Shown here: positions 2,052-63,400 of the stretch, piece by piece
Position numbering within the stretch: position 1 is the first letter of the stretch
How the letters are laid out: each line of letters starts with the position of its first letter
From: Octopus sinensis
Taxonomy: Eukaryota
DNA length: 64,000 nt
NCBI RefSeq assembly: GCF_006345805.1
Contig: NC_043010.1
Location: forward strand, 42,222,001 to 42,286,000
Reading direction: 5' to 3'
Translations under genes and position numbers: made by a program
Notes under the pieces: model-generated
Database searches by the model: none
The model's input: only the letters and a program-made list of their open reading frames with translations
What the model was told of the DNA's origin: nothing

Positions 2052-2504
2052 GTGATGTTTGTAGAGGCCACAGGCCACGGAGAACTAGCTCGTAGATTTA
2101 GGAAAGCTCTGAAGGAGACCAAACTCAACATTAACATTGTTGAAAAGCCAGGGAACTGCATCAGATCACAACTATGTAGGAAGTACCCCTTCGAGAATAC
2201 CATATGCACCAATGCTAACAGCATGGTATGGAGGATTAGCCCTGGCATTAACTGTAGAACTAGAAATGTAGTCTTCATAGTCTACATCATAGGATCCATA
2301 GAAAGTACTTGTAAAGATATGAACATGACATACATAGGTGAGACATCTAGAAGCATTGCGGTAAGACAATATGACAACACTCCATCCTCTAGCAAAATAC
2401 CAAGGACCAACATGGTGACAACCTGGGTCAACTTGACACCTGCATTTTATCCAAGCATCCAAAGGATCCAACACTCAGACAAATACAAGAGTACGTCCTC
2501 ATAA
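2052..2504 (+). mobile_element. Penelope-like element relic, GIY-YIG endonuclease region
   Basis: ORF contains FVEAT..GELARRFRKALK, IVEKPG, NCRTRNVVFIV and YIGETSRSIAVR, matching the PLE C-terminal GIY-YIG pattern; degenerate 3' end. Confidence 0.8.
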
Positions 2505-2893: not shown

Positions 2894-3020
2894 CTGTGTC
2901 GAAGAGCGTAGGCTCGAAACATAAAATACTTTTTCTATTTCTATTCCTGAGCGCTATACTAATACATTTGTTTGTTTCTACTCCACCTGCTTTCGTCTTT
3001 CGTTTATTTTTGTAAACTTT
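2894..3020 (+). mobile_element. Short PLE-terminus-like element with decayed minimal hammerhead
   Basis: Homologous to the reverse complement of 4262-4393; retains gagc-gtag-gctc-GAAAC but the core reads ctgtgtcga; preceded by (TA)n. Confidence 0.7.
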
Positions 3021-3399
3021 CTCTTTTGTAAACATGCCCCAGCATGGCCACAGCTCATTAGCTGAAACTGGAAAAATCAAAATCAAATCAAAATCATATA
3101 TATATATATATAGTCCACTGTATTATCTTCTATACGGTTTTGGTGGCAACATCTCGGAATTTTCTTACTTTTTGTTCATATATATGCATACATGTGTGTG
3201 TGTGTGTGAAAAACATAGTGAGAAAATTCTGAGATATTGCCACCTATACTGTATAGAAGAATACAGTGAACTTTCTCCCTCTCCTCCCACGCCCCTCATT
3301 CTTTACTAAACTAACACGCCAAATATATCATAACACCCACATAAATGTCTTAATATGTGTACATGCGAGTGAGTGTATATGTATGAACGTGTACTTGAC

Positions 3400-4261: not shown

Positions 4262-4393
4262 TAGGGAGAGTTTACGAAAGAAACAAAAGACGAAGACAGG
4301 TGGTGTACAAAACAAACAGATGTATTAGTATAACGCTCAGGAATAGAAAACGTCTTTTACGTTTCGAGCCTACGCTCTTCTACAGAAAGGGAC
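4262..4393 (-). mobile_element. Short element carrying a minimal type I hammerhead variant (4352-4393)
   Basis: Minus strand reads gtcccttt-CTGTAGA-a-gagc-gtag-gctc-GAAAC-GTA-aaagac: 4-bp stem II, bulged 6-bp stem I, A6 replaced by U, extra A after A9. Flanked by (TA)n. Confidence 0.7.
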
Positions 4394-4594
4394 ATATACA
4401 TATATACTTGGGGTGCGTTCGCAAACGCACACACGTGTATATCTGCATATATATATATATATATATTCACATATATATATATATATGTATATACATACAG
4501 ACTTGCATACATACATGCATACATATATATATATATATATATATATGTAGGCAGTCATCAAACAGTTTTTGTTCGTCTTGAGGCTGAAAGAGGC

Positions 4595-4691
4595 TCCTTA
4601 TCTTTCCTGATGAGAAGATGGCATAATGCACCCTTTATTCCTTCGGAATTAAGAGTATGCCGTCTTCGAAACATGTGTCGAGAGTAAAGGA
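4595..4691 (+). ncRNA. Type I hammerhead ribozyme with canonical core
   Basis: CTGATGA 4607-4613; 12-bp stem II 4614-4625/4656-4667 (one G-U); GAAAC 4668-4672; loop atgt (palindrome acatgt); GTC 4677-4679; stem I 4595-4606/4680-4691 = 5 bp + 2x2 internal loop + 5 bp. Confidence 0.9.
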
Positions 4692-4726
4692 ATTTTGTTA
4701 AAATCTTCGTTCGACTCCATTCTTTC

Positions 4727-4761
<35 letters not shown>

Positions 4762-5358: not shown

Positions 5359-5592
5359 AAGGCGGCGAGCTGGCAGAAACGTTAGCACGTCGGGCGAAAT
5401 GCTTAGCGGTATTTCGGCTGCCGTTACGTCGGGAGTTCAAATTCTGCCGAGGTCGACTTTGCCTTTCATCCTTTTGGGGTCGATAAATTAAGTACCAGTT
5501 ACGCACTGGGATCGATATAATCGACTTAATCCGTTTGTCTGTCCTTGTTTGTCCTCTCTGTGTTTTAGCCCCTTGTGGGTAGTAAAGAAATA
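5359..5592 (+). mobile_element. SINE family A (ggcggcgagctggcag head), full monomer with TSD
   Basis: B-box gttcaaatt; 16-bp direct repeat ggtattaagattgctt at 5343-5358 and 5593-5608; many homologous copies in the window. Confidence 0.9.
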
Positions 5593-7820: not shown

Positions 7821-7910
7821 ATATATATAATACACCTACTTGTTGTTCTACACCTGCCTCCGTCTTTTGTTTTTTTGGGGGAAATTTAAACTATATAAAG
7901 ATATATATAG

Positions 7911-10032: not shown

Positions 10033-10203
10033 AGACGGCGAGCTGACAGAATCGTTAGCTCACCGGGCTAAATGCTTAGCGGCATTTCGTCCGTCTTTAC
10101 GTTCTGGGTTCAAATTTCGCTGAGGTCAATAAAGTAAGTACCAGTCGAGCGTTGGAGTCGATTTAATCGACTTAACTCCTCCTCCAAAATTGCTGGCCTT
10201 GTG
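10033..10203 (+). mobile_element. SINE family A variant
   Basis: Head ggcgagctgacagaatcgttagc, B box gttcaaattt, tail ccaaaattgctggccttgtg. Confidence 0.8.
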
Positions 10204-17160: not shown

Positions 17161-17363
17161 AAGACAGCGGGTTGACTGGATCGTTAGAACGCCGAACAAA
17201 ATGTTTAAAGGCGTTTCTTTCGGATTTACGTTCTAAGTTCAAATGCTGCTGCGACCGAGTTTGCTTTTCACCCTTTAGTGATCGATAAAATGAATATTGG
17301 AGTCGATGTGATCGATTAACCCCCTCCCCCAAATCTCTGGCCTTGTGCCTATGGTAGAAAGGA
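17161..17363 (+). mobile_element. SINE family A variant, diverged
   Basis: gatcgttagaacgccg head, gttcaaat B box, ggccttgtgcctatggtagaaagga tail. Confidence 0.75.
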
Positions 17364-17498: not shown

Positions 17499-18049
17499 TC
17501 AGTTTAATTTCGACTTAAAGATCAGTCTCAGTCCGCGCAAGTACTCCACCTTAATTTTTTCTGTAATTTCTTTCTCCATCAATTTATCCATTTTCAAAAT
17601 CCCTAAGTACTTATAGCCCGTCTCTTCTATCTCCTTCGTAACCTCTCCCGACATTTGATTTTGCAGCTCTTCAAGACTAACACACCACACTTTTTCAGTC
17701 CGAGCTCCATTCTGATATCAGTACTGAATATATAAACCGTATCAACGAGGGAACTGACTTAGGATTTATTTTTACCATAAAGTTTGGGGTCATCCATGAA
17801 TAACAAGTGGTTGACTTTTTGTTGGCCGTTTTTGAATACATACCCAGCCTTTGCTCTCCTCAGAATCAGTGTTAGTTGTATCATGGACAGTACAAAGATC
17901 AGTGGGGACAGGCAGTCTCCTCGGAAGCTGCCTTTCCTGATTTCTACTGTCCCTAAACTTCTTCCATATGCTGTCAGTTCCATCCTCCGCTTCGGCATAC
18001 TTTTTCCAAGCAATCGCTTAACATTCGATACAATACCAAATAGGTTCAT
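17499..18049 (-). mobile_element. R4/Dong-type non-LTR retrotransposon reverse transcriptase relic
   Basis: KGSFRGDCLSPLIFVLSMIQLTLILRR, KVNHLLFMDDPKLYGK and YKYLGIL..EKIKVEYLRGLRLIFKSKLN match RT motifs 4-5 and the downstream region of this clade. Confidence 0.85.
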
Positions 18050-18083
18050 CCATTCTATAATCTAAGACTGTGTCATCATATCG

Positions 18084-22199: not shown

Positions 22200-22946
22200 C
22201 CACGTGTTTCACTGTTCGAAGCAGTGCTGGAACTCTTGCAAAGTGATGCCTTTTAACGCCTCCGTCGTTTTTTTTTTTTTCACCTCTTCCACGTCTGCAA
22301 ATTCCATAGCACCAGTTTTCGTAACCTGTGATGACCTTCGAAAAAATGTCCGGACCAATTTCCAACTGTTTTTTCAGTTCATAACAGGCATTCAGTCATA
22401 ACCGCTTTTGGTCTTCCGTGAGCAAGTGAGGTACAAATTTTGTTGCAACACTTTTCATTCGCAATTCCTCGCTCAAAACTCTCTGGCAGGAGCCAATCAT
22501 ATCAACAAGTTCATCGTGAATTTTCATGATACTGTCATTCTTCCGGGAGGTTGATGGTCGTCCTGAATGTAGTTGGTCTTCGAGCGACAAGTGACCATTT
22601 CAAAAGCGTAGAAACCACTCGTTAGCTTGTGTTTTGCTCAAGGCAGCGATCTTCTAAGCTGTCTGAAATATGACAACTGTTTCGACCGCCGTTTTCCCCA
22701 ATAGAAAATAAAATTTCCCCGAAGCACGCTATTCCTTCGTTTCAACCATCACAAACATCGATGAACAGCGGAGAAGAACTGCAAAACAAAGACGCATCAC
22801 ATGGCAGTAGGACTTTACTCGACGACACCTGTCGACAGACTGATGCCTGATGGTCGCATCAAGTAACTTCTCGCAGCGGAAGCCTGAACTACAACGGGTT
22901 TGTCCCACAGAGAACGTTTCCGGTTACATTTTGGTACCCTGTCGTA
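22200..22946 (-). mobile_element. Mariner element, internally deleted
   Basis: Translated blocks SGRPSTS, LRMKSVATKFVPHLLTEDQK, SKVITGYENWCYG and FADVEEVKKK..ALKGIT; TIR-like ttccggttacattttgg..tcgta at 22918-22946. Confidence 0.85.
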
Positions 22947-24660: not shown

Positions 24661-24663
<3 letters not shown>

Positions 24664-24750
24664 GGAGAATTCACAAAAAACAAAAGACGAAGACTGGTGG
24701 TGTAGACAACAGATGTATTAGTATAACGCACAAGAAGTGAAAAAGTCATA
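24661..24750 (-). mobile_element. 3' portion of the 4262-4393 element family (no hammerhead retained)
   Basis: tagggaga..caaaagacgaagac.ggtggtgta..acagatgtattagtataacgc shared with 4262-4340; abuts (TG)n. Confidence 0.8.
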
Positions 24751-26031: not shown

Positions 26032-26943
26032 TACGAGTCGATATCAAAAGGTTCATAGTGTAGTTATGTTTAATAAAAAAAATAGCTTATTTACCAAAAT
26101 TTTAACTTCATCTTCTTCGAAATAGTCACATTGCGCAGCAATATACCGGTCCCAGCGTTCCATCCGCTTTTGGAATCAGGCCTGGACGTCGTTTTCCGTA
26201 AGCGAGTCGAGGAATTCTGCGATTCGTTCTGGATCTCGACAACGGTGACATTTAAGCAACATTTTCGTCTTGAAGAAAAAGAAATCCGCAGATGCTAAAT
26301 CTGACGAATAGGGTGGGTGCAGAAGCGATACCATGTTGTTTTTGACGAGAATCTCACGAGTGAGGAGAGCTCGGTGACAGGGTGCATTGCCGTCGTGAAG
26401 AATCCAATTTTTCGCGCTCCGTGGATCCGGTCGTTTTCGCTGAATGTCCTCCCTCAGACGCTTCAAAACGTCACAGTAGAACTCTCGATTGACGGTCTGG
26501 CCCTAGGAGAAGAATTCTCGATGCACAATACCACATTTCCGGGGCTGACACTCGTGGCAGTTCTTCTTGATTGCCCGTCGTCTTCCAAGGACGTTCTTTC
26601 GCTTTTGAAGCACCCGCACCACTCGAAACATTGCGTACAACCCATTGCCTCGTCGCCGTAAGCTTGCCAAAGCATGCTCGATATCTCCGTAGCAGACTTC
26701 CCAAGTTTCACGCAAAATTTCACGTTGACACTTTGTATCTGTCCATGGCAAACTCATTGACTACAGAATGCACGTGATAACAGAAACACAAATTTCAAAA
26801 CTTGCGAAAGTAAACACAACAATGTCACTCGGTACATTACCTCATGAAGGTCACTGCTAGCCCTCACTGCACAAGCATTCGTGTGCGGTCATCTGTCGGC
26901 GCACTACAGAAATAGTCCGGGAACTTTTGGGTGCAACCTGATA
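26032..26943 (-). mobile_element. Mariner element with both TIRs, internally deleted
   Basis: HTH block MKFCVKLGKSATE..EW..FKS.RTSLEDD, catalytic blocks WILHDGNAPCHRA and HPPYSSDLASADF; degenerate TIRs at 26032 and 26917-26943. Confidence 0.9.
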
Positions 26944-39757: not shown

Positions 39758-40103
39758 GAGAGGAAAAATTATAAGGCAGAATGCTAAATTGAAAGAAAAT
39801 TTTAATAAAAATGGGTGTATGGAAAAAAAAAGAAAAAAATAATATATCAAATCGGTTTTCATAGCAAGGCAAATTTTCAAGATTTGGAAGTGGAAAAGAA
39901 TTTTTTTTTAAATTGAGGAAGGAGAAAAAAGAAATTTACAATGTTTTTTTCAAAAAAATATTAATACATATATACAAAAATTAATAAATAAGTATACCAA
40001 TACATTGTAGAGTCTTTATGCTTTTAGAGTTCAATAATAGTCCTTGGAAAAACTTCTTTGGCGGATTAGGATGCATATATATATATATGTATATATATAT
40101 ATT

Positions 40104-40370
40104 AGAAAATGGATGTAATAGCAAGGGGAAACTCGTGGTTTTCGCTGGTATGCCCTTAATTTAATTAGATAACAAAGAAGAAGGAAGCAGAGAATATAGA
40201 TAGATGCATCTATTTATATTCGCATTCTGAAGAGATTTACTTAAACCAGTAAATCGAAACGATCGTAAATGCTATGTTCATCTCTGCTTTCTCCTTCTTT
40301 ATTATCTAATTAAATTAAAGGCATACCAGCGAAAGCCATGAGTTTCCACTTGTTATTACATCCATTTTCT
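40104..40370 (+). mobile_element. 267-nt foldback element with a hammerhead ribozyme in its loop
   Basis: 40104-40193 is the reverse complement of 40281-40370 with 8 substitutions and no gaps; both ends run into TA-rich sequence. Confidence 0.9.
40222..40272 (+). ncRNA. Type I hammerhead ribozyme, fully canonical
   Basis: gcatt-CTGAAGA-gatttact-taaacc-agtaaatc-GAAAC-gatc-GTA-aatgc: 5-bp stem I, 8-bp stem II, palindromic acgatcgt over stem III; predicted cleavage after 40267. Confidence 0.93.
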
Positions 40371-40544
40371 TCTATATAACCTAAACTAAGGTTTATCAAC
40401 CGAGCCACCTGCTACCGTACCACCTAACAAAAGATTTTACCTACCCAGGTAATAACCAGGAGCGACTTTGGATTTAATTATCCCTTAGCGGTATTAAACC
40501 CCTCTAAATGATACCTACACTATATATATATATATATATATATA

Positions 40545-40937
40545 TATTTCTTTATTGCCCACAGGGGGATAAACACAAAGGGGACAAAAAAAGGGATTAA
40601 ATCGATTACATCGACCCCCACCAGTGTGTAACTGGTACTTATTTAATCGACCCCGAAAGGATGAAAAGCAAAGTCGACCACTGCGGAATTTGAACCCAAG
40701 ACGTAACGGCAGACGAAATACCTATTTCTTTACTACCCACAAGGGGCTAAACACAGAGGGAACAAACAAGGACAGATAAACGGATTAAGTCGATTATATC
40801 GACTCCAGTGCGTAACTGGTACTTATTTAATCGACCCCGAAAGGATGAAAGGCAAAGTCGACCTCGGCGGAATTTGAACTCAGAACGTAACGGCAGCCGA
40901 AATACCTGCTAAGCATTTCGCCCGGCGTGCTAACGAT
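40545..40937 (-). mobile_element. SINE family A tandem dimer, 5' end clipped
   Basis: Two head-to-tail body units joined at 40722/40723 (minus strand aaagaaata|ggtatttcg). Confidence 0.88.
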
Positions 40938-45312: not shown

Positions 45313-45521
45313 AAGGTGGAAAGCGGACAGAATCGTTAGGACGCTGGGCAAAATGATTAGCGACACTTTGTCGTTCTGAGTTCAAATTCTGCCGAGGTCG
45401 ACCATGCTTTTTATATATCCTTTCGGAGTCGATAAAATAAGTACCAGTCGAGTACTAGGGTCGATGCAATCGCTTTACCTCCGCCCCCGAAATTGGTGGC
45501 CTTGTGCCAAACTTTGAAACC
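45313..45521 (+). mobile_element. SINE family A variant
   Basis: cagaatcgttagg head, ctgagttcaaattctgccgaggtcgac, ggccttgtgccaaactttgaaacc tail. Confidence 0.85.
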
Positions 45522-51462: not shown

Positions 51463-53710
51463 GTTTTGTTTCATTGGTCCTTTCAACTAACGGTCTTAAG
51501 CATGCAATGAACAAAATTCAGTATAAAATCATCTTGTTATAAAATCGAAGAAAACCTTAAATCAAAGGATAGAGGGTTAATAATTATATGCAAAATATAC
51601 ATATATACACTAAAACGTACAGGCGCGTGTACATAGTTATATACATATGAAGACATATATAGGCGAGACGTAAATATATATATACAAATACATATGTGTG
51701 TGTGTGTGTGGTGTGTGTGTGTGTGTGTGTGTGTGTGTAGGAACACATGCACACGCACAAAACCTCCCGGTGTATGCATTACAGATCAGTTGCTACAGAC
51801 AAAAGAAAGGGAATGTATACATTTCAAAATGCTGCACCCTATTACAATAACGCATTAAGGAAAAGTGGATGCTCGGAGAATATCTAGTATAATCTAGTTA
51901 ATGCTCGCAATAATATGACACGTAGAGCTAGAACTAGGAGAGTTTTGTGATTTAACCCAGCGTTTAATATGGCCGTAAGAACTAATATAGGTAAGGAATT
52001 ATTAAAATTAGTCTCTAAGCATTTTCAATCCAGCCATAAGTTCTGTAGAATATTTAATAGGAGAACGCAGAAGATTAGTTATTCTTGTTGCAAAAACTTC
52101 GCCTCTTTTATTAGCCAACACAATACTAAAATTATTACAGACAACTACGTGCCGAATCTAATCCGAGGAATTGTAACTTCAAAGATGAGACCTGCTGTCC
52201 GTTGGAAGGAAAATGTCTCGAAAAAGGTATTGTCTAGAGAGCTAAAATGCAAATAAAAGGCTCACAAGAATATAAAGCATATCCAGGAGCTTCAGAAAAT
52301 TATTTCAAGACTCGATTCCATCCCTACCGAAATTCCTTCAGGCACCCCGTAAACAGGACAGCGACTAGTCTTGCAAAGCATGTCTGGGAATTGAAAGAGA
52401 ATGAAATCCGTCCTTTCAATGTAATCTGGAAAATCCAAGATAAAGCATCAGCTTACAGACATGGAGCTTATAAAAAATTTATGAAATGTGATCTTTACTT
52501 TACGGAGAAGTTCTTTATCCTGTTCCAGGATAAAAACGCTCTGAACCAGGGACGCAAGTGCATAACAAAATCTAAAATGGCACATAATAAAATTTTAAAT
52601 GTCAGCCGACAAAATACCATATGGGTAATATATTTTGACTTTCGAAATATTTTCGACTGCCGCTTTTAAATTTGTCTTTACAGTGTATGATTATTTCGCA
52701 TCGCAACGATATAGAATATATTTCGACTTATTCTTTAAGAAAACCTTTACTGTTTTACAAATTTAATTTCAAGCTTAAGCTTTGCCGAAGTTCATTTTTA
52801 TTATTTTATTTTATTTTATTTTACACAGGTATTAAATTATTATATCAAATTTACATATAATTTCACATATGGTGCAGCATTTTGAAATGCTGTCTCATCT
52901 GAATTTTAATATTATACACGTCGAGCAGCTTCTTAAAATTTGTCTGTATATGTGCGATATGATGTAGACATGTCACTATATATTTATATTTATGTGTATG
53001 TTTGTATGTATGTATTGTAGATATGCACATGCATGCGTACGTATACATTTGCGTATGTGTATGTGTGTAAGTATATGTGTATGTATATATATATATATAT
53101 GTAATTTTACGCGTGCGTTGGTTGCGCAAAATTTATTAAGTACCTTTCCCTGCTCGCTACTTTGGTAGCGTCTTTACGTAACGCCTTATTCCTTACCTTT
53201 TTCTCCCGCTTCTCTCGTTATAGCGCTATACTTTTTCTGTTTCACTTTCATTTTCTGTTTTTCTTTTTCTCTTCCACCTCCCTTTGCTTAATGCATACTT
53301 TCCCTATCTTTCGTCTGTAATAACTGACCTGCATATGCATACACCGGGAGATTTTGTATTTGTTTATACATTTATGTCTCGGCCATATATGTCTATATAT
53401 GTATATAACTAATTACATGCGTCTGTACGTTTTAGTGTATATATGTATATTATAGATGATTTAGTATGTGAATAGGCTGCTAAATTCATATGTAATCCAG
53501 CGTGAAAATTTTTAATTGTTAATTTTTAATCTGATATAACTTTATTGTATTAATTGATTTATATTTTGCATATAATTATTTACCCTATGTGTTTAGACTC
53601 TGTCCTTTGATTGAAGGTTTTTATTCGGTTTTATAACAAGATGATTTTATTCTGAATTTTGTTCATTGCATGCTTAAGACCGTTAGTTGAAGACACCGAT
53701 GAAACAAAAC
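51463..53710 (+). mobile_element. 5'-truncated Penelope-like element with an inverted copy of its 3' region at the 5' junction
   Basis: 51463-51823 is the reverse complement of 53290-53710 (with one internal deletion and a TG insertion); the ORF relic starts immediately at 51824. Confidence 0.8.
51824..52620 (+). pseudogene. PLE C-terminal RT/linker/GIY-YIG coding relic
   Basis: NAAPYYNNALRKSG, VL*FNPAF..VRTNIGKELLKLVSKHF, IFNRRTQKISYSC, CNF..CCPLEGKCLEKGIV, YFKTRF, SLAKHVWELKE, KCDLYFTEK; stops and frameshifts. Confidence 0.9.
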
Positions 53711-55390: not shown

Positions 55391-55529
55391 TCTGAGTTCA
55401 AATTCTGCCGATATCGACTGTCTTTCCTCCTTTCGGGGTCGGTGAAATAACAGCTGAGCACTGGGGTCGATGCAACCAATTTACTCCCTCTGAAAATTCT
55501 TGACTCTGTGCCAAAATTTGAAACCAATA
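55391..55529 (+). mobile_element. SINE family A, 5'-truncated
   Basis: ttctgagttcaaattctgccga..cctttcggggtcg..gtgccaaaatttgaaaccaa. Confidence 0.8.
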
Positions 55530-57411: not shown

Positions 57412-57892
57412 TTTCACGCTACGAATTTTACACAAGTTATATAACTTCCCTCATCCGCCGAGTTTTTCATCAGTGCTCTATTGTATTAACTTTAAATTAC
57501 TTTTTACTGAAGTTTAAAAAAATTGGTTATATTAGTACCGTACTGTAATTAATTTTTTTCTCAAAATTTTCTATTATATTCACTCACTTCTCTCCTCTCC
57601 TTAAATTCGCACCTTTCCTCCTCTCTTTCTCGCTTCTCCAGTTTATTTTAGATTTTTTCTTTCTGTTTTCTTCCTTGAGTTTTTACGCTTTACGTCCCTC
57701 CACGCATTCTTTTTTCCCTCGACAATGAAGGCGTCTTTGTGCCAATGTTGTATTGTAATTATTCTTTTTCCAGTTCGCTTTCATTCTTCTATTAATTCTT
57801 CCTGAACTCACGTTTTTTTATTTTTCATTTTCCCTCGTTCATGTCTTGTTTCTATGTAACACCGTCTCATACCCTTGCAAACACTTCAATCA

Positions 57893-58546
57893 CATCTTCC
57901 ACTGCCATCTTGCCTTTCCATCTTCCATCTTGCCTTTCCATCTTCCATCTTGCTTTTCCATCTTCCATCTTGCCTTTCTATCTTGCCTTTCCATCTTCTA
58001 TTTTGCCTTTCCATCTTCCATCTTGACTTGCCTTTCCATCTTCCATTTTGTCTTTCCATCTTCCATTTTGCCTTTCCATCTTCCATCTTGCCTTTCCATC
58101 TTCCATCTTGCCTTTCTATCTTGCCTTTCCATCTTCTATCTTGCCTTTCCATCTTCCATCTTGACTTGCCTTTCCATCTTCTATTTTGTCTTTCCATCTT
58201 CCATTTTGCCTTTCCATCTTCCATCTTGCCTTTCCATCTTCCATCTTGCCTTTCTATATTGCCTTTCCATCTTCTATCTTGCCTTTCCATCTTCCATCTT
58301 GCTTTGCCTTTCCATCTTCCATTTTGTCTTCCCATCTTCCATCTTGCATCTTGCCTTTCCATCTTCCATCTTGCTTTTCCATCTTCCATCTTGCCTTTCC
58401 ATCTTCAATTTTGCCTTTCCATCTTCCATCTTGCCTTTCTATCTTCCATCTTGCCTTTCTATCTTACCTTTCCATCTTCCATCTTCCATTTTGTCTTTCC
58501 ATCTTCCATCTTGCCTTTCCATCTTCCATCTTGCCTTTCCATCTTG
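57893..58546. repeat. Minisatellite of CCATCTT/GCCTTT units (20-bp core) with 138-bp higher-order period
   Basis: Variant marker gacttgcc/gctttgcc recurs at 58025, 58163 and 58301. Confidence 0.92.
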
Positions 58547-59138
58547 CACCAGCTCTCACCGTCTTACTTCCACGCTTTCCTCACGCACACACACACACAC
58601 ACATACACACACGCACAAAAACAAACACACACACGCGCGCATGCAAAACGATTACACAAACACCAACGCCTCACACTGCTACTAAACCATGCCACTATAA
58701 TTCTGCACTTCCACACCTGTACACATGTACATAAACCACTCGCCCCTTAAAACTATCTGAAAATACAGATACACACTCTTATATGTTTACTCACCTGCCC
58801 AATCCTCACGTTTTAATTCCCCCACAGAACCACATTTCGACCTTGCGCATAGTTTTTCGGTCATCTTTTTTATTTCCTTCAACATTTTCCCTATTTCACT
58901 CTCCTCCTAATGCTTTTCTGATGAATGGCTAACACCCGAAACGCTGCGACTCTTTCCCTTCTTTGTGTTAACCCCCAATATTGTCTTTTTCTTTTTTGTA
59001 CATTACATTTCAAATACGTCTGTGTTATTGTGAGTACATCTATTGTAATTTCATCCTTTGTTATTAAGTTTGAGTTTGAGTTTTACAATGACTATATGCA
59101 GAAAAAAACATTACACACACACACATGTAGTATGTAGG

Positions 59139-62615: not shown

Positions 62616-62871
62616 GGTGAGCTTGCAGAATCGTTAGCATGCCGAGAAAGATGCTTGGCGCCCTTTTGTCCGTCTTTACGTTTTTAATTCAAATTCAACC
62701 GAGGTCGACTTTGTCTTTCATCAATGAAAATCGATTACATTGACCCAGTGCTCAACAGATATTTATTTTATTGACACTGAATAGATGAAAGGCAAAGTCA
62801 ACCTCGGCGAAATTTGAACTCAGAACGTAAAGACCCGATGTAAATGCTCGTCCGATTCTGTCAGCTCGCCG
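62616..62871. mobile_element. Tail-to-tail inverted pair of family A SINE fragments
   Basis: 62673-62722 pairs with 62784-62833; heads at 62616 (+) and 62871 (-). Confidence 0.8.
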
Positions 62872-62998: not shown

Positions 62999-63400
62999 GG
63001 CGGCGAGCTGGGCACGCCGGGCAAAATGCTTAGCAGTATTTCATCTGCCTTTACGTTCTGAGTTCAAATTCCACCGAGGTCGACTTTGCCTTTCATCCCT
63101 TCTGGGTCGATTAAATAAGTAACAGTTACGCACTGGGGTCGATATAATCGACTTAATCCGTTTGTCTGTCCTTGTTTGTCCTCTCTGTGTTTAGCCCCAT
63201 GTGGATAGTAAAGAAATAGGTATTTCGTTGTCGTTACGTTCTGAGTTCAAATTCCGCCGAGGTCGACTTTGCCTTTCGTCATCTCGGGGTCGATAAATAA
63301 AGTACCAGTTGCGCACTGGGTCGATGTAATCGACTTAATCTCTTTGTCTGTCCTTGTTTGTCCTCTCTATGTTTAGCCCCTTGTGAGTAGTAAAGAAATA
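62999..63400 (+). mobile_element. SINE family A tandem dimer with 18-bp TSD
   Basis: tatattttttcgaagtgt at 62981-62998 and 63401-63418 flanks both units; junction aaagaaata|ggtatttcg at 63218/63219. Confidence 0.92.

What the first reader, a model, noticed from the sequence alone, without database searches (positions are those of the whole stretch)
40104..40370. Foldback mini-element with a canonical hammerhead ribozyme in the loop of a 90-bp hairpin
Seen: two 90-nt arms are ungapped inverted repeats (82 Watson-Crick pairs, 4 G-U, 3 A-C, 1 G-A on the + transcript). They enclose an 87-nt loop with an unmutated type I HHR (CUGAAGA, 8-bp stem II, GAAAC-gauc-GUA, 5-bp stem I, palindromic acgatcgt). 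The inversion extends, with a small indel, to about 40272, within 5 nt of the predicted cleavage site at 40267, and a 14-bp palindrome atagatgcatctat (40200-40213) sits at the other junction. Established: Penelope-like elements carry type I HHRs with palindromic stem III loops in their termini and often have an inverted terminal copy at the 5' end. Inference: the left arm is a cDNA copy of the ribozyme-generated 3' fragment, making this a protein-free, self-cleaving, long-dsRNA mini-retroelement. After cleavage the products would stay paired, giving a nicked duplex with A-C mismatches that could be an ADAR or Dicer substrate. I know of no description of such an element in cephalopods.
Basis: partly seen in the sequence, partly recalled or inferred. 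Interest (0 to 1): 0.88.

Follow-up and report, generated by a model that had tools for sequence, protein, structure and literature searches.

The report
Inverted Penelope-type retroelement fragment with hammerhead
A 267-bp hairpin-forming repeat with an intact hammerhead ribozyme motif is most likely two short Penelope-like retrotransposon tail ends inserted head-to-head into a (TA)n microsatellite, which is a known insertion pattern and not a new kind of self-cleaving mini-element.

Summary
The sequence features are real. The full motif is expected 0.013 times per shuffled window.

The inverted copy does not stop at the cleavage site. Reverse-complemented, 40104-40206 equals 40207-40370 apart from one clean 61-nt gap that removes the whole ribozyme. 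The symmetry centre is 40206|40207, inside a 30-bp palindrome.

The HHR has the minimal architecture published for Penelope-like elements (PLEs): a long helix II, a 2-bp helix III with a palindromic loop, and an open helix I. The published PLE examples cleaved poorly as monomers in vitro.

The window holds a second, unrelated HHR in a ~180-bp insert (4551-4728). Both inserts interrupt (TA)n tracts. Strong 5' truncation, an abutting inverted copy, an HHR near the 3' end and a (TA)n target bias are all published PLE traits, and a PLE protein has been shown to prime on both target strands.

No relatives could be retrieved, because the source genome is absent from every collection searched. Family recurrence therefore remains untested.

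Verdict: an ordinary new member of a known kind, of low interest.

The parts
40075..40103 (.). (TA)n microsatellite abutting the left end of the insert; presumed target tract
   Evidence: A (TA)>=5 tract lies within 6 nt of the boundary, against a chance of 0.0265 per boundary.
40104..40206 (-). Left, inverted copy of the unit (103 nt). Its 3' terminus (…CCATTTTCT) faces outward at 40104. It lacks the hammerhead.
   Evidence: Global alignment of rc(40096-40206) to 40207-40378 has a single 61-nt gap. It differs from the right copy at 9 of 103 positions, 8 of them transitions.
40192..40221 (.). 30-bp palindrome (14 of 15 pairs) centred at 40206|40207; the head-to-head junction of the two copies
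   Evidence: I18. Reached by 0 of 5000 shuffles and 1 of 5000.
40207..40370 (+). Right, direct copy of the unit (164 nt): 15 nt upstream segment, a 59-nt segment unique to this copy (HHR plus 8 nt), and the 90-nt arm ending …CCATTTTCT
   Evidence: The terminal 19-mer occurs only at the two outer ends of the element.
40222..40272 (+). Type I hammerhead ribozyme motif of the minimal PLE type; predicted cleavage after A17 = 40267
   Evidence: Read by hand. Descriptor hit with helices II/III/I of 8/3/5 pairs (the third helix III pair is sterically unrealistic, so 2 bp plus a GAUC loop), 0.013 expected per window. RF00163 covers the full model at 13.8 bits, below gathering.
40222..40282 (+). 61-nt segment present in the right copy and absent from the left copy (equivalently 40220-40280; 2-nt 'tc' microhomology)
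   Evidence: alignment. No GT..AG on either strand, so it is not an intron (read).
40373..40378 (.). 'tatata' immediately right of the insert; a remnant of the target tract or a possible target-site duplication
   Evidence: Cannot be distinguished within a microsatellite.
4551..4728 (+). Second, unrelated HHR-bearing short insert flanked on both sides by (TA)n; no inverted partner
   Evidence: It shares no sequence with element 1 beyond the HHR core.
4602..4684 (+). Second type I hammerhead: helix I CUUUC/GAGAG, CUGAUGA 4607-13, 12-bp helix II with a 30-nt loop, GAAA 4668-71, helix III ACAUGUGU, GUC with the cut after 4679
   Evidence: RF00163 gives 18 bits, E = 0.035, full model, below gathering.

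Best explanation
The locus is a head-to-head doublet of the 3'-terminal, hammerhead-bearing unit of a Penelope-like retroelement (PLE), or of a short non-autonomous element that uses PLE machinery. It was inserted by target-primed reverse transcription into a (TA)n microsatellite. The two outer ends (40104 and 40370) are the same element nucleotide, which is the 3' end where reverse transcription starts. The two copies meet at 40206|40207. Inferred steps: the PLE endonuclease cut both strands of the (TA)n target; each 3'-OH primed a cDNA from element RNA, or one cDNA snapped back on itself; and the two inward-growing copies joined at a short palindrome. This gave a roughly 2 x 164-nt palindrome. 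The left copy then lacks 61 nt that include the ribozyme, either because of a later deletion in an unstable palindrome or because the polymerase skipped the folded ribozyme. The copies have since drifted apart by 8.7%. The hammerhead is the standard minimal ribozyme carried in PLE terminal repeats. With a 2-bp helix III and a palindromic loop it is expected to need a second copy (a dimer) for appreciable cleavage, and this locus has none. The element is therefore most likely an inert relic whose transcript, if any, would form a long hairpin.
For: Shown here. Arms and counts. The left copy equals the right copy minus one 61-nt gap, with the symmetry centre in a significant 30-bp palindrome. Both outer termini are the same 19-mer, found nowhere else in the window. 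The complete HHR is expected 0.013 times per window yet occurs twice, both on the + strand, each 49-103 nt from the downstream end of a short insert. Three of the four insert boundaries abut (TA)>=5 tracts, at P = 0.0265 each. There is no ORF of 50 aa or more inside the element. From the literature. PLE insertions are strongly 5'-truncated, often with an inverted 5'-truncated copy directly adjacent; HHRs lie in the pLTR near the 3' end; a microsatellite bias towards (TA)n is reported for Naiads and a related linker-mediated bias was proposed for Neptune (PMC8557442). PLE min-HHRs have a long helix II, G10.1-C11.1 and a palindromic helix III or loop. Most occur singly and were attributed to truncated PLEs, and some occur as pairs on opposite strands 100-700 bp apart (PMC4209133). 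A purified PLE protein cleaves and extends both target strands (PMC11167929). Penelope families are abundant in octopus genomes (PMC13282606 and PMC8967140).
Against: No parent PLE or other family member could be retrieved, so homology of the arms to a PLE terminus is not shown. No recognisable PLE RT/EN gene lies in the window; an endonuclease-like ORF at 2052-2501 had no Pfam or database match. The target-site duplication cannot be read in a microsatellite. (TA)n tracts are common here, at 68 per 64 kb. The cause of the 61-nt difference is unknown. Both copies starting at the same nucleotide would also fit a defined 164-nt non-autonomous unit.
Confidence: 0.68

Rival explanations
1. A dedicated short non-autonomous element (SINE-like or retrozyme-like, unit about 164 nt = 40207-40370) that parasitises PLE machinery. 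Under this reading both copies are full length, not truncated, which would explain why they begin at the same nucleotide.
For: Both copies start at the equivalent of 40207. The unit size is near the lower bound of metazoan retrozymes, 170-400 nt (PMC7229834). Retrozymes are reported to derive from PLE pLTRs (bioRxiv 10.64898/2026.07.22.740005).
Against: There is no tandem array and only one HHR at the locus. The HHR is of the minimal PLE type, not the canonical retrozyme type with loop 1-loop 2 contacts. There is no second copy in 64 kb. A junction at a palindrome explains the shared start point equally well.
Confidence: 0.17
2. The hammerhead cleaves the transcript after 40267, the 3' fragment is reverse-transcribed to its new 5' end, and that cDNA forms the left arm, giving a self-cleaving, protein-free mini-retroelement.
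For: The ungapped arm ends 13 nt from the predicted cleavage site, and the HHR core is intact.
Against: The proposed extension to about 40272 is no better than chance, matched by 2621 of 5000 shuffles. The left copy lacks 40268-40280 and instead continues with a 14-of-15 copy of 40207-40221, upstream of the ribozyme. Published PLE min-HHRs showed no or low cleavage as monomers (PMC4209133). In the one PLE tested, HHR cleavage was dispensable for insertion and no transcripts ended at the HHR site (PMC11167929).
Confidence: 0.03
3. A foldback MITE, meaning a non-autonomous DNA transposon with long terminal inverted repeats and a TA target duplication, that happens to carry a hammerhead in its loop.
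For: The size of 267 bp, the AT richness and the long inverted arms fit. The boundaries can be drawn as TA|TTAGAAAATGG…CCATTTTCTTC|TA. Mariner remnants occur in the window.
Against: The termini mismatch at the outermost 2-3 nt under that reading. Nothing else in the window, including the mariner remnants, resembles the element. The model explains neither the PLE-type HHR nor the second HHR insert in (TA)n, which has no inverted arms.
Confidence: 0.06
4. A solo truncated PLE tail that was later duplicated in inverted orientation by a replication fold-back or template switch, unrelated to integration.
For: There is a perfect symmetry centre in a palindrome.
Against: The inverted repeat stops at the element's own 3' terminus on both sides, apart from palindromic TA, and does not carry unique flanking DNA with it. 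That is expected for two priming events and not for a segmental fold-back.
Confidence: 0.06

Closest known systems
5'-truncated Penelope-like element insertions with an adjacent inverted 5'-truncated copy (Penelope/Poseidon and Neptune clades; Craig et al. 2021, PMC8557442)
   Same: Head-to-head inverted copies with the 3' ends facing outward, extreme 5' truncation, a hammerhead on the sense strand near the 3' end, and insertion into a (TA)n microsatellite.
   Different: It is very short, 164 + 103 nt. One copy lacks the ribozyme. No parent element was identified. The (TA)n bias was documented mainly for Naiads, which lack canonical HHRs, and was only proposed for Neptune.
Minimal PLE-type hammerhead ribozymes (Cervera & de la Peña 2014, PMC4209133)
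   Same: An invariant core, G10.1-C11.1, a long helix II (8 and 12 bp), a very short helix III with a palindromic or quasi-palindromic sequence (ACGAUCGU, ACAUGUGU), an open helix I with no loop-loop contacts, and occurrence as single dispersed motifs.
   Different: There is no bulged nucleotide between A9 and G10.1. Helix III is present, as in the fly, rotifer and shrimp variants, and not absent as in the strict min-HHR. None of the papers I read describes HHRs in cephalopod PLEs.
Metazoan non-LTR retrozymes (Cervera & de la Peña 2020, PMC7229834; Li et al. 2026 bioRxiv)
   Same: A short, AT-rich, non-coding, HHR-bearing unit of PLE ancestry with a highly structured RNA.
   Different: It is not tandem and has a single HHR, so no monomer can be excised. 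The HHR is not the canonical retrozyme type. There is no evidence of circular RNA.
L1 twin-priming inversions (established knowledge, not re-read here)
   Same: Two cDNAs primed from the two strands of one target give an inverted, 5'-truncated structure.
   Different: L1 inversions join two different parts of one RNA and are not symmetric palindromes. Here both copies cover the same 3' unit.

Membership tests
Hammerhead ribozyme, type I | Invariant core C3 U4 G5 A6 N7 G8 A9 … G12 A13 A14, the A15.1-U16.1 pair, and H17 not G | tested here: met
   All are present at 40227-40267 and at 4607-4679.
Hammerhead ribozyme, type I | Three helices around the core, with helix I open | tested here: met
   Helices I/II/III have 5/8/2 bp in the first HHR and 5/12/3 bp in the second. 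The helices differ completely between the two while the core is kept. 0.013 hits are expected per shuffled window.
Hammerhead ribozyme, type I | Reaches the Rfam RF00163 gathering score (34 bits) | tested here: not met
   The scores are 13.8 and 18 bits, with the full model aligned, and nothing reaches gathering. The model penalises the long helix II.
Hammerhead ribozyme, type I | Self-cleavage at the predicted site | not testable with these tools
   This needs an in vitro transcription assay. Published PLE min-HHRs gave no or low cleavage as monomers (PMC4209133).
Penelope-like element insertion | HHR of the minimal PLE type in the terminal region, on the sense strand, near the 3' end | tested here: met
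   The cleavage site lies 103 nt (first element) and 49 nt (second element) from the downstream end.
Penelope-like element insertion | 5' truncation, optionally with an inverted 5'-truncated copy abutting the 5' end | tested here: met
   The head-to-head copies meet at 40206|40207.
Penelope-like element insertion | Insertion bias for microsatellites such as (TA)n | tested here: met
   Three of four boundaries abut (TA)>=5 tracts, with P = 0.0265 per boundary.
Penelope-like element insertion | Sequence homology to the pLTR or 3' end of an RT + GIY-YIG element in the same genome | not testable with these tools
   The source genome is absent from all collections, and no PLE ORF was recognised in the window.
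Penelope-like element insertion | A 30-40-bp 'tail' extension at one end | tested here: inconclusive
   Both ends run straight into TA-rich DNA, and a tail cannot be defined from a single copy.
Metazoan non-LTR retrozyme | Tandem repeats of 150-450 bp, each with a type I HHR | tested here: not met
   There are no direct repeats of the unit and only a single HHR.
Metazoan non-LTR retrozyme | Canonical HHR with loop 1-loop 2 tertiary contacts (helix I about 6 bp, helix II about 4 bp) | tested here: not met
   Helix II has 8 bp, and helix I is open with no loop 1 (criteria from PMC7229834).
MITE / foldback DNA transposon | Terminal inverted repeats that match an autonomous transposon, plus a fixed target-site duplication | tested here: inconclusive
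   The arms are inverted by construction, and a TA duplication is possible but uninformative within (TA)n. Nothing else in the window, including the mariner remnants, matches the element.

The most novel reading that the evidence does not exclude
The foldback is one member of a cephalopod family of PLE-dependent elements in which an HHR-bearing unit is regularly laid down as a hairpin. On this reading the palindromes in the unit, namely the central AUAGAUGCAUCUAU and the ribozyme's ACGAUCGU, guide the head-to-head joining, and the transcripts feed the ADAR or small-RNA pathways. A related possibility is that the precise absence of the ribozyme from one arm reflects the reverse transcriptase skipping the folded HHR.
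Probability: 0.07. Interest if true: 0.55.

Novelty: new member of a known kind. Interest (0 to 1): 0.18.

Why it matters
As it stands, this is a clean textbook example, not a discovery. It shows the published PLE insertion signature at single-locus resolution: an inverted truncated copy, a terminal hammerhead and a microsatellite target. If the window is from a cephalopod, which I could not verify, it indicates that cephalopod PLE-type elements carry the usual minimal hammerheads; none of the papers I read mentions this. Two small points may interest specialists. First, the junction sits exactly on a palindrome, which hints at how two cDNAs of the same sense could anneal. Second, one copy lacks precisely the ribozyme. 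Neither point can be generalised from one locus.

Tried and rejected
1. Rfam at gathering threshold on the whole window gave no hits. A permissive scan of 700 nt returned only generic long-hairpin matches to miRNA models (MIR8562 and others), which I discarded as artefacts of the long stem.
2. I looked for other copies in the window. blastn found only (TA)n hits, and the terminal 19-mer occurs only at the element's own two ends.
3. Exact look-ups of the two small ORFs that run into the arms found nothing on record.
4. Public DNA scans with a family-specific arm pattern gave 0 hits in metagenome, viral and prokaryotic genome collections. The element's own HHR pattern gave 0 hits in viral contigs.
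5. A general pattern for PLE-type HHRs gave 13 metagenome hits. All lacked helices I and II, so they are chance matches.
6. I considered the ORF at 2052-2501 (…YIGETSRS…) as a possible PLE endonuclease remnant. It had no Pfam hit even at E <= 10 and no homologue, so I dropped it.
7. I tried to sample the source genome through transposon proteins. The LINE RT pseudo-protein had best hits of 69% identity on ENA contigs (L014, L015) from a different organism, with no (TA)n tracts and no copies of the window's SINE. A profile of SINE-derived ORFs found a single 543-nt contig.
8. I considered the 61-nt segment as a retained intron and rejected it, because there is no GT..AG on either strand.
9. The 3' tails of the two HHR elements share no significant similarity.
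10. Element 2 as a rod-like RNA: the fold z-score is only -1.76.

Full report
OBSERVATION. The inverted repeat is real and far beyond chance. The repeat finder reports arms at 40096-40193 and 40281-40378, 98 nt long, 90% complementary, with an 87-nt spacer. The 283-nt transcript folds at -153 kcal/mol, against -52 ± 4.6 for shuffles, z = -22.

The hammerhead (HHR) also reads correctly. Helix I is GCAUU (40222-26) paired with AAUGC (40268-72). The core is CUGAAGA (40227-33). Helix II is GAUUUACU/AGUAAAUC, 8 bp, closed by G10.1-C11.1, with loop UAAACC. GAAA lies at 40256-59. Helix III is A-C[GAUC]G-U, and A17 is 40267. A structural descriptor requiring the core and all three helices finds it, and is expected 0.013 times per dinucleotide-shuffled window. 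Rfam's Hammerhead_1 model aligns over its full length but scores only 13.8 bits against a gathering score of 34. Nothing in the window reaches any Rfam gathering score. The motif is therefore supported by the descriptor statistics and not by Rfam.

The 14-bp palindrome is the core of a 30-bp palindrome at 40192-40221 with 14 of 15 pairs (I18). None of 5000 shuffles reaches that, and 1 of 5000 does. Its left half overlaps the inner end of the left arm.

A global alignment of the reverse complement of 40096-40206 against 40207-40378 is collinear, with one clean 61-nt gap. The left copy carries the 15 nt that precede the ribozyme (CATCTATcTATATTC against CATCTATtTATATTC) and then jumps straight to TCTCTGC…, the start of the arm. 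The gap (40222-40282, or 40220-40280 given a 2-nt 'tc' ambiguity) removes the whole hammerhead plus 8-10 nt. It has no GT..AG on either strand, so it is not an intron.

The structure is therefore two copies of one unit joined head-to-head at 40206|40207. The right copy (164 nt) has the ribozyme and the left copy (103 nt) does not. The inverted copy does not end at the cleavage site. It lacks 40268-40280 and resumes upstream of the ribozyme, which removes the basis for reading the left arm as a cDNA of the ribozyme-generated 3' fragment.

A SECOND HAMMERHEAD. The same descriptor finds one more hit in the window, on the same strand. It has CUGAUGA at 4607-13, a 12-bp helix II with a 30-nt loop, GAAA, helix III ACAUGUGU (self-complementary as RNA through two G-U pairs), GUC with the cut after 4679, and helix I CUUUC/GAGAG. 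Rfam RF00163 gives 18 bits, E = 0.035, with the full model aligned. A relaxed descriptor that allows one core mismatch finds no further sites.

This ribozyme lies in a ~180-bp block (4551-4728) bounded on both sides by (TA)n. It shares nothing with element 1 beyond the core, so the two belong to different families. All three helices differ while the core is kept, which is what two authentic members of one ribozyme class should look like.

TARGET. A random boundary in this window has a (TA)>=5 tract within 6 nt with probability 0.0265. Three of the four boundaries of the two elements do, and the fourth abuts 'tatata'. Both outer ends of element 1 are the same element nucleotide (…GYTATTACATCCATTTTCT), and that 19-mer occurs nowhere else in the window. 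The inverted repeat does not carry unique flanking DNA. This fits two priming events at one target better than a later segmental fold-back.

COMPARISON WITH WHAT IS KNOWN. Craig et al. 2021 (PMC8557442) describe PLE insertions as strongly 5'-truncated. [quoted passage not shown] They place HHRs in the pseudo-LTRs near the 3' end, and they report an insertion bias for microsatellites, including (TA)n.

Cervera & de la Peña 2014 (PMC4209133) define the PLE hammerheads. These have a large helix II, a conserved G10.1-C11.1 pair, and a very short helix III that is palindromic, so the motif is thought to work as a dimer. A single S. mansoni min-HHR showed no detectable self-cleavage in vitro, and dimeric or helix III-extended constructs cleaved only weakly. 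Most motifs are single and 'probably related to truncated PLEs', and some occur as pairs 100-700 bp apart on opposite strands.

Frangieh et al. 2024 (PMC11167929) show that a purified PLE protein cleaves and extends both strands of its target, which gives a direct route to head-to-head copies. They also show that HHR cleavage is not needed for insertion in vitro, and they found no RNA-seq reads ending at the HHR site.

Non-LTR retrozymes (PMC7229834; bioRxiv 10.64898/2026.07.22.740005) are tandem, carry the canonical HHR type, and are proposed to derive from PLE pLTRs. This locus is neither tandem nor canonical in that sense. Penelope families are abundant in octopus genomes (PMC13282606 and PMC8967140), but those papers do not mention ribozymes.

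MECHANISM. What is shown: the anatomy, the microsatellite association, and the HHR class. What is inferred: a PLE RT/endonuclease, supplied in trans, cut a (TA)n tract. cDNA synthesis from element RNA was primed on both strands, or one cDNA snapped back. The inward ends were then joined at a palindrome. Two cDNAs of the same sense can anneal only at a self-complementary sequence, which would explain why the junction is centred on ATAGATGCATCTAT.

The 61-nt difference arose either by later deletion in an unstable ~330-bp palindrome or by the polymerase skipping the compact ribozyme fold. One locus cannot decide between these. The copies differ at 9 of 103 positions (8.7%, JC 0.093), and 8 of the 9 differences are transitions. 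That is ordinary neutral drift. If the copies were born identical, the event is old, very roughly 10-15 My under the rate used in PMC13282606. The A-C and G-U 'mismatches' of the hairpin are simply these transitions.

With a single HHR, a 2-bp helix III and no loop-loop contacts, efficient self-cleavage of this locus's transcript is unlikely.

LIMITS. I could not obtain any relative. Two exact ORF look-ups found nothing. Scans of metagenome, viral and prokaryotic collections gave zero family-specific hits. A general HHR pattern returned 13 hits, all without helices I and II and therefore chance matches.

Three protein searches did not reach the source genome. The endonuclease-like ORF at 2052-2501 had no hits. 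The LINE RT remnant had best hits of 69% identity on contigs of another organism, with no (TA)n tracts and no copies of the window's SINE. A profile of SINE-derived ORFs found one 543-nt contig.

Homology to a specific PLE, copy number and recurrence of the layout are therefore untested, and the cephalopod origin of the window is unverified.

VERDICT. The PLE association is supported. The idea of a self-cleaving mini-retroelement made from the cleaved 3' fragment is not. This is a new member of a known kind and an ordinary relic of PLE-type integration.

Noticed in passing
window 4551-4728 (+); HHR 4602-4684: A second complete type I hammerhead of a different family lies in a ~180-bp insert flanked on both sides by (TA)n. 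It has a 12-bp helix II with a 30-nt loop and a GUC cleavage triplet, with the cut after 4679. It has no inverted partner.
   Followed up: yes
window 4264-4400; also 2897-3021 (-), 24663-24747 (+), 7824-7876 (-): A short dispersed repeat of about 130 nt, 79-83% identical between copies, of unknown class. The copy at 4264-4400 lies between (TA)n tracts, just upstream of hammerhead element 2.
   Followed up: partly
window 40549-40907; further copies at 5408-5588, 63036-63396, 62664-62830, 45377-45477, 55393-55489, 17226-17291 and 10081-10127: An abundant SINE-like repeat with copies 73-82% alike. It occurs as a tandem pair right after the (TA)n tract at 40521-40548, about 180 bp downstream of the foldback. 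A profile of its conceptual ORFs found only one 543-nt ENA contig in the protein collection.
   Followed up: partly
window 26179-26753 (-), and possibly 22399-22599 (-): An internally deleted mariner-type transposase remnant with Pfam HTH_48 at E = 9e-6 and weak DDE_3/Transposase_1 matches. A separate mariner-looking ORF at 22399-22599 had no Pfam hit. No similarity to the foldback was found.
   Followed up: partly
window 17502-18061 (-): A frameshifted LINE reverse-transcriptase remnant (weak RVT_1 match; motif FMDD) next to long (AAT/ATT)-type microsatellites. Its closest database relatives are 67-69% identical and lie on ENA contigs of another organism.
   Followed up: partly
window 2052-2501 (+): A 150-aa ORF with a stretch resembling a GIY-YIG endonuclease motif (…NVVF…C…MTYIGETSRS…R). 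It has no Pfam hit at E <= 10 and no homologue in 5.8 billion proteins, so it may be chance or a badly decayed remnant.
   Followed up: yes
window 51951-52666 (+): Two adjacent ORFs (101 and 143 aa), the second containing …ENYFKTRFHPYRNSFRH…LAKHVWELKENEI…. They look like a transposon-derived protein, but Pfam gives only a weak zf-RING_10 hit on the first ORF at E = 0.045.
   Followed up: no
window 57846-58750: A low-complexity tandem repeat that is open in three + frames and one - frame, with peptides such as LSIFHLAFPSSILPFHLPSC repeated. It has no Pfam match and is very likely a minisatellite, not a gene.
   Followed up: no
whole window: (TA)n microsatellites are very dense: 68 tracts of at least 5 units, 2.3% of the bases, at 34.8% G+C. 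Any argument that a feature lies 'next to (TA)n' needs the background rate given.
   Followed up: yes
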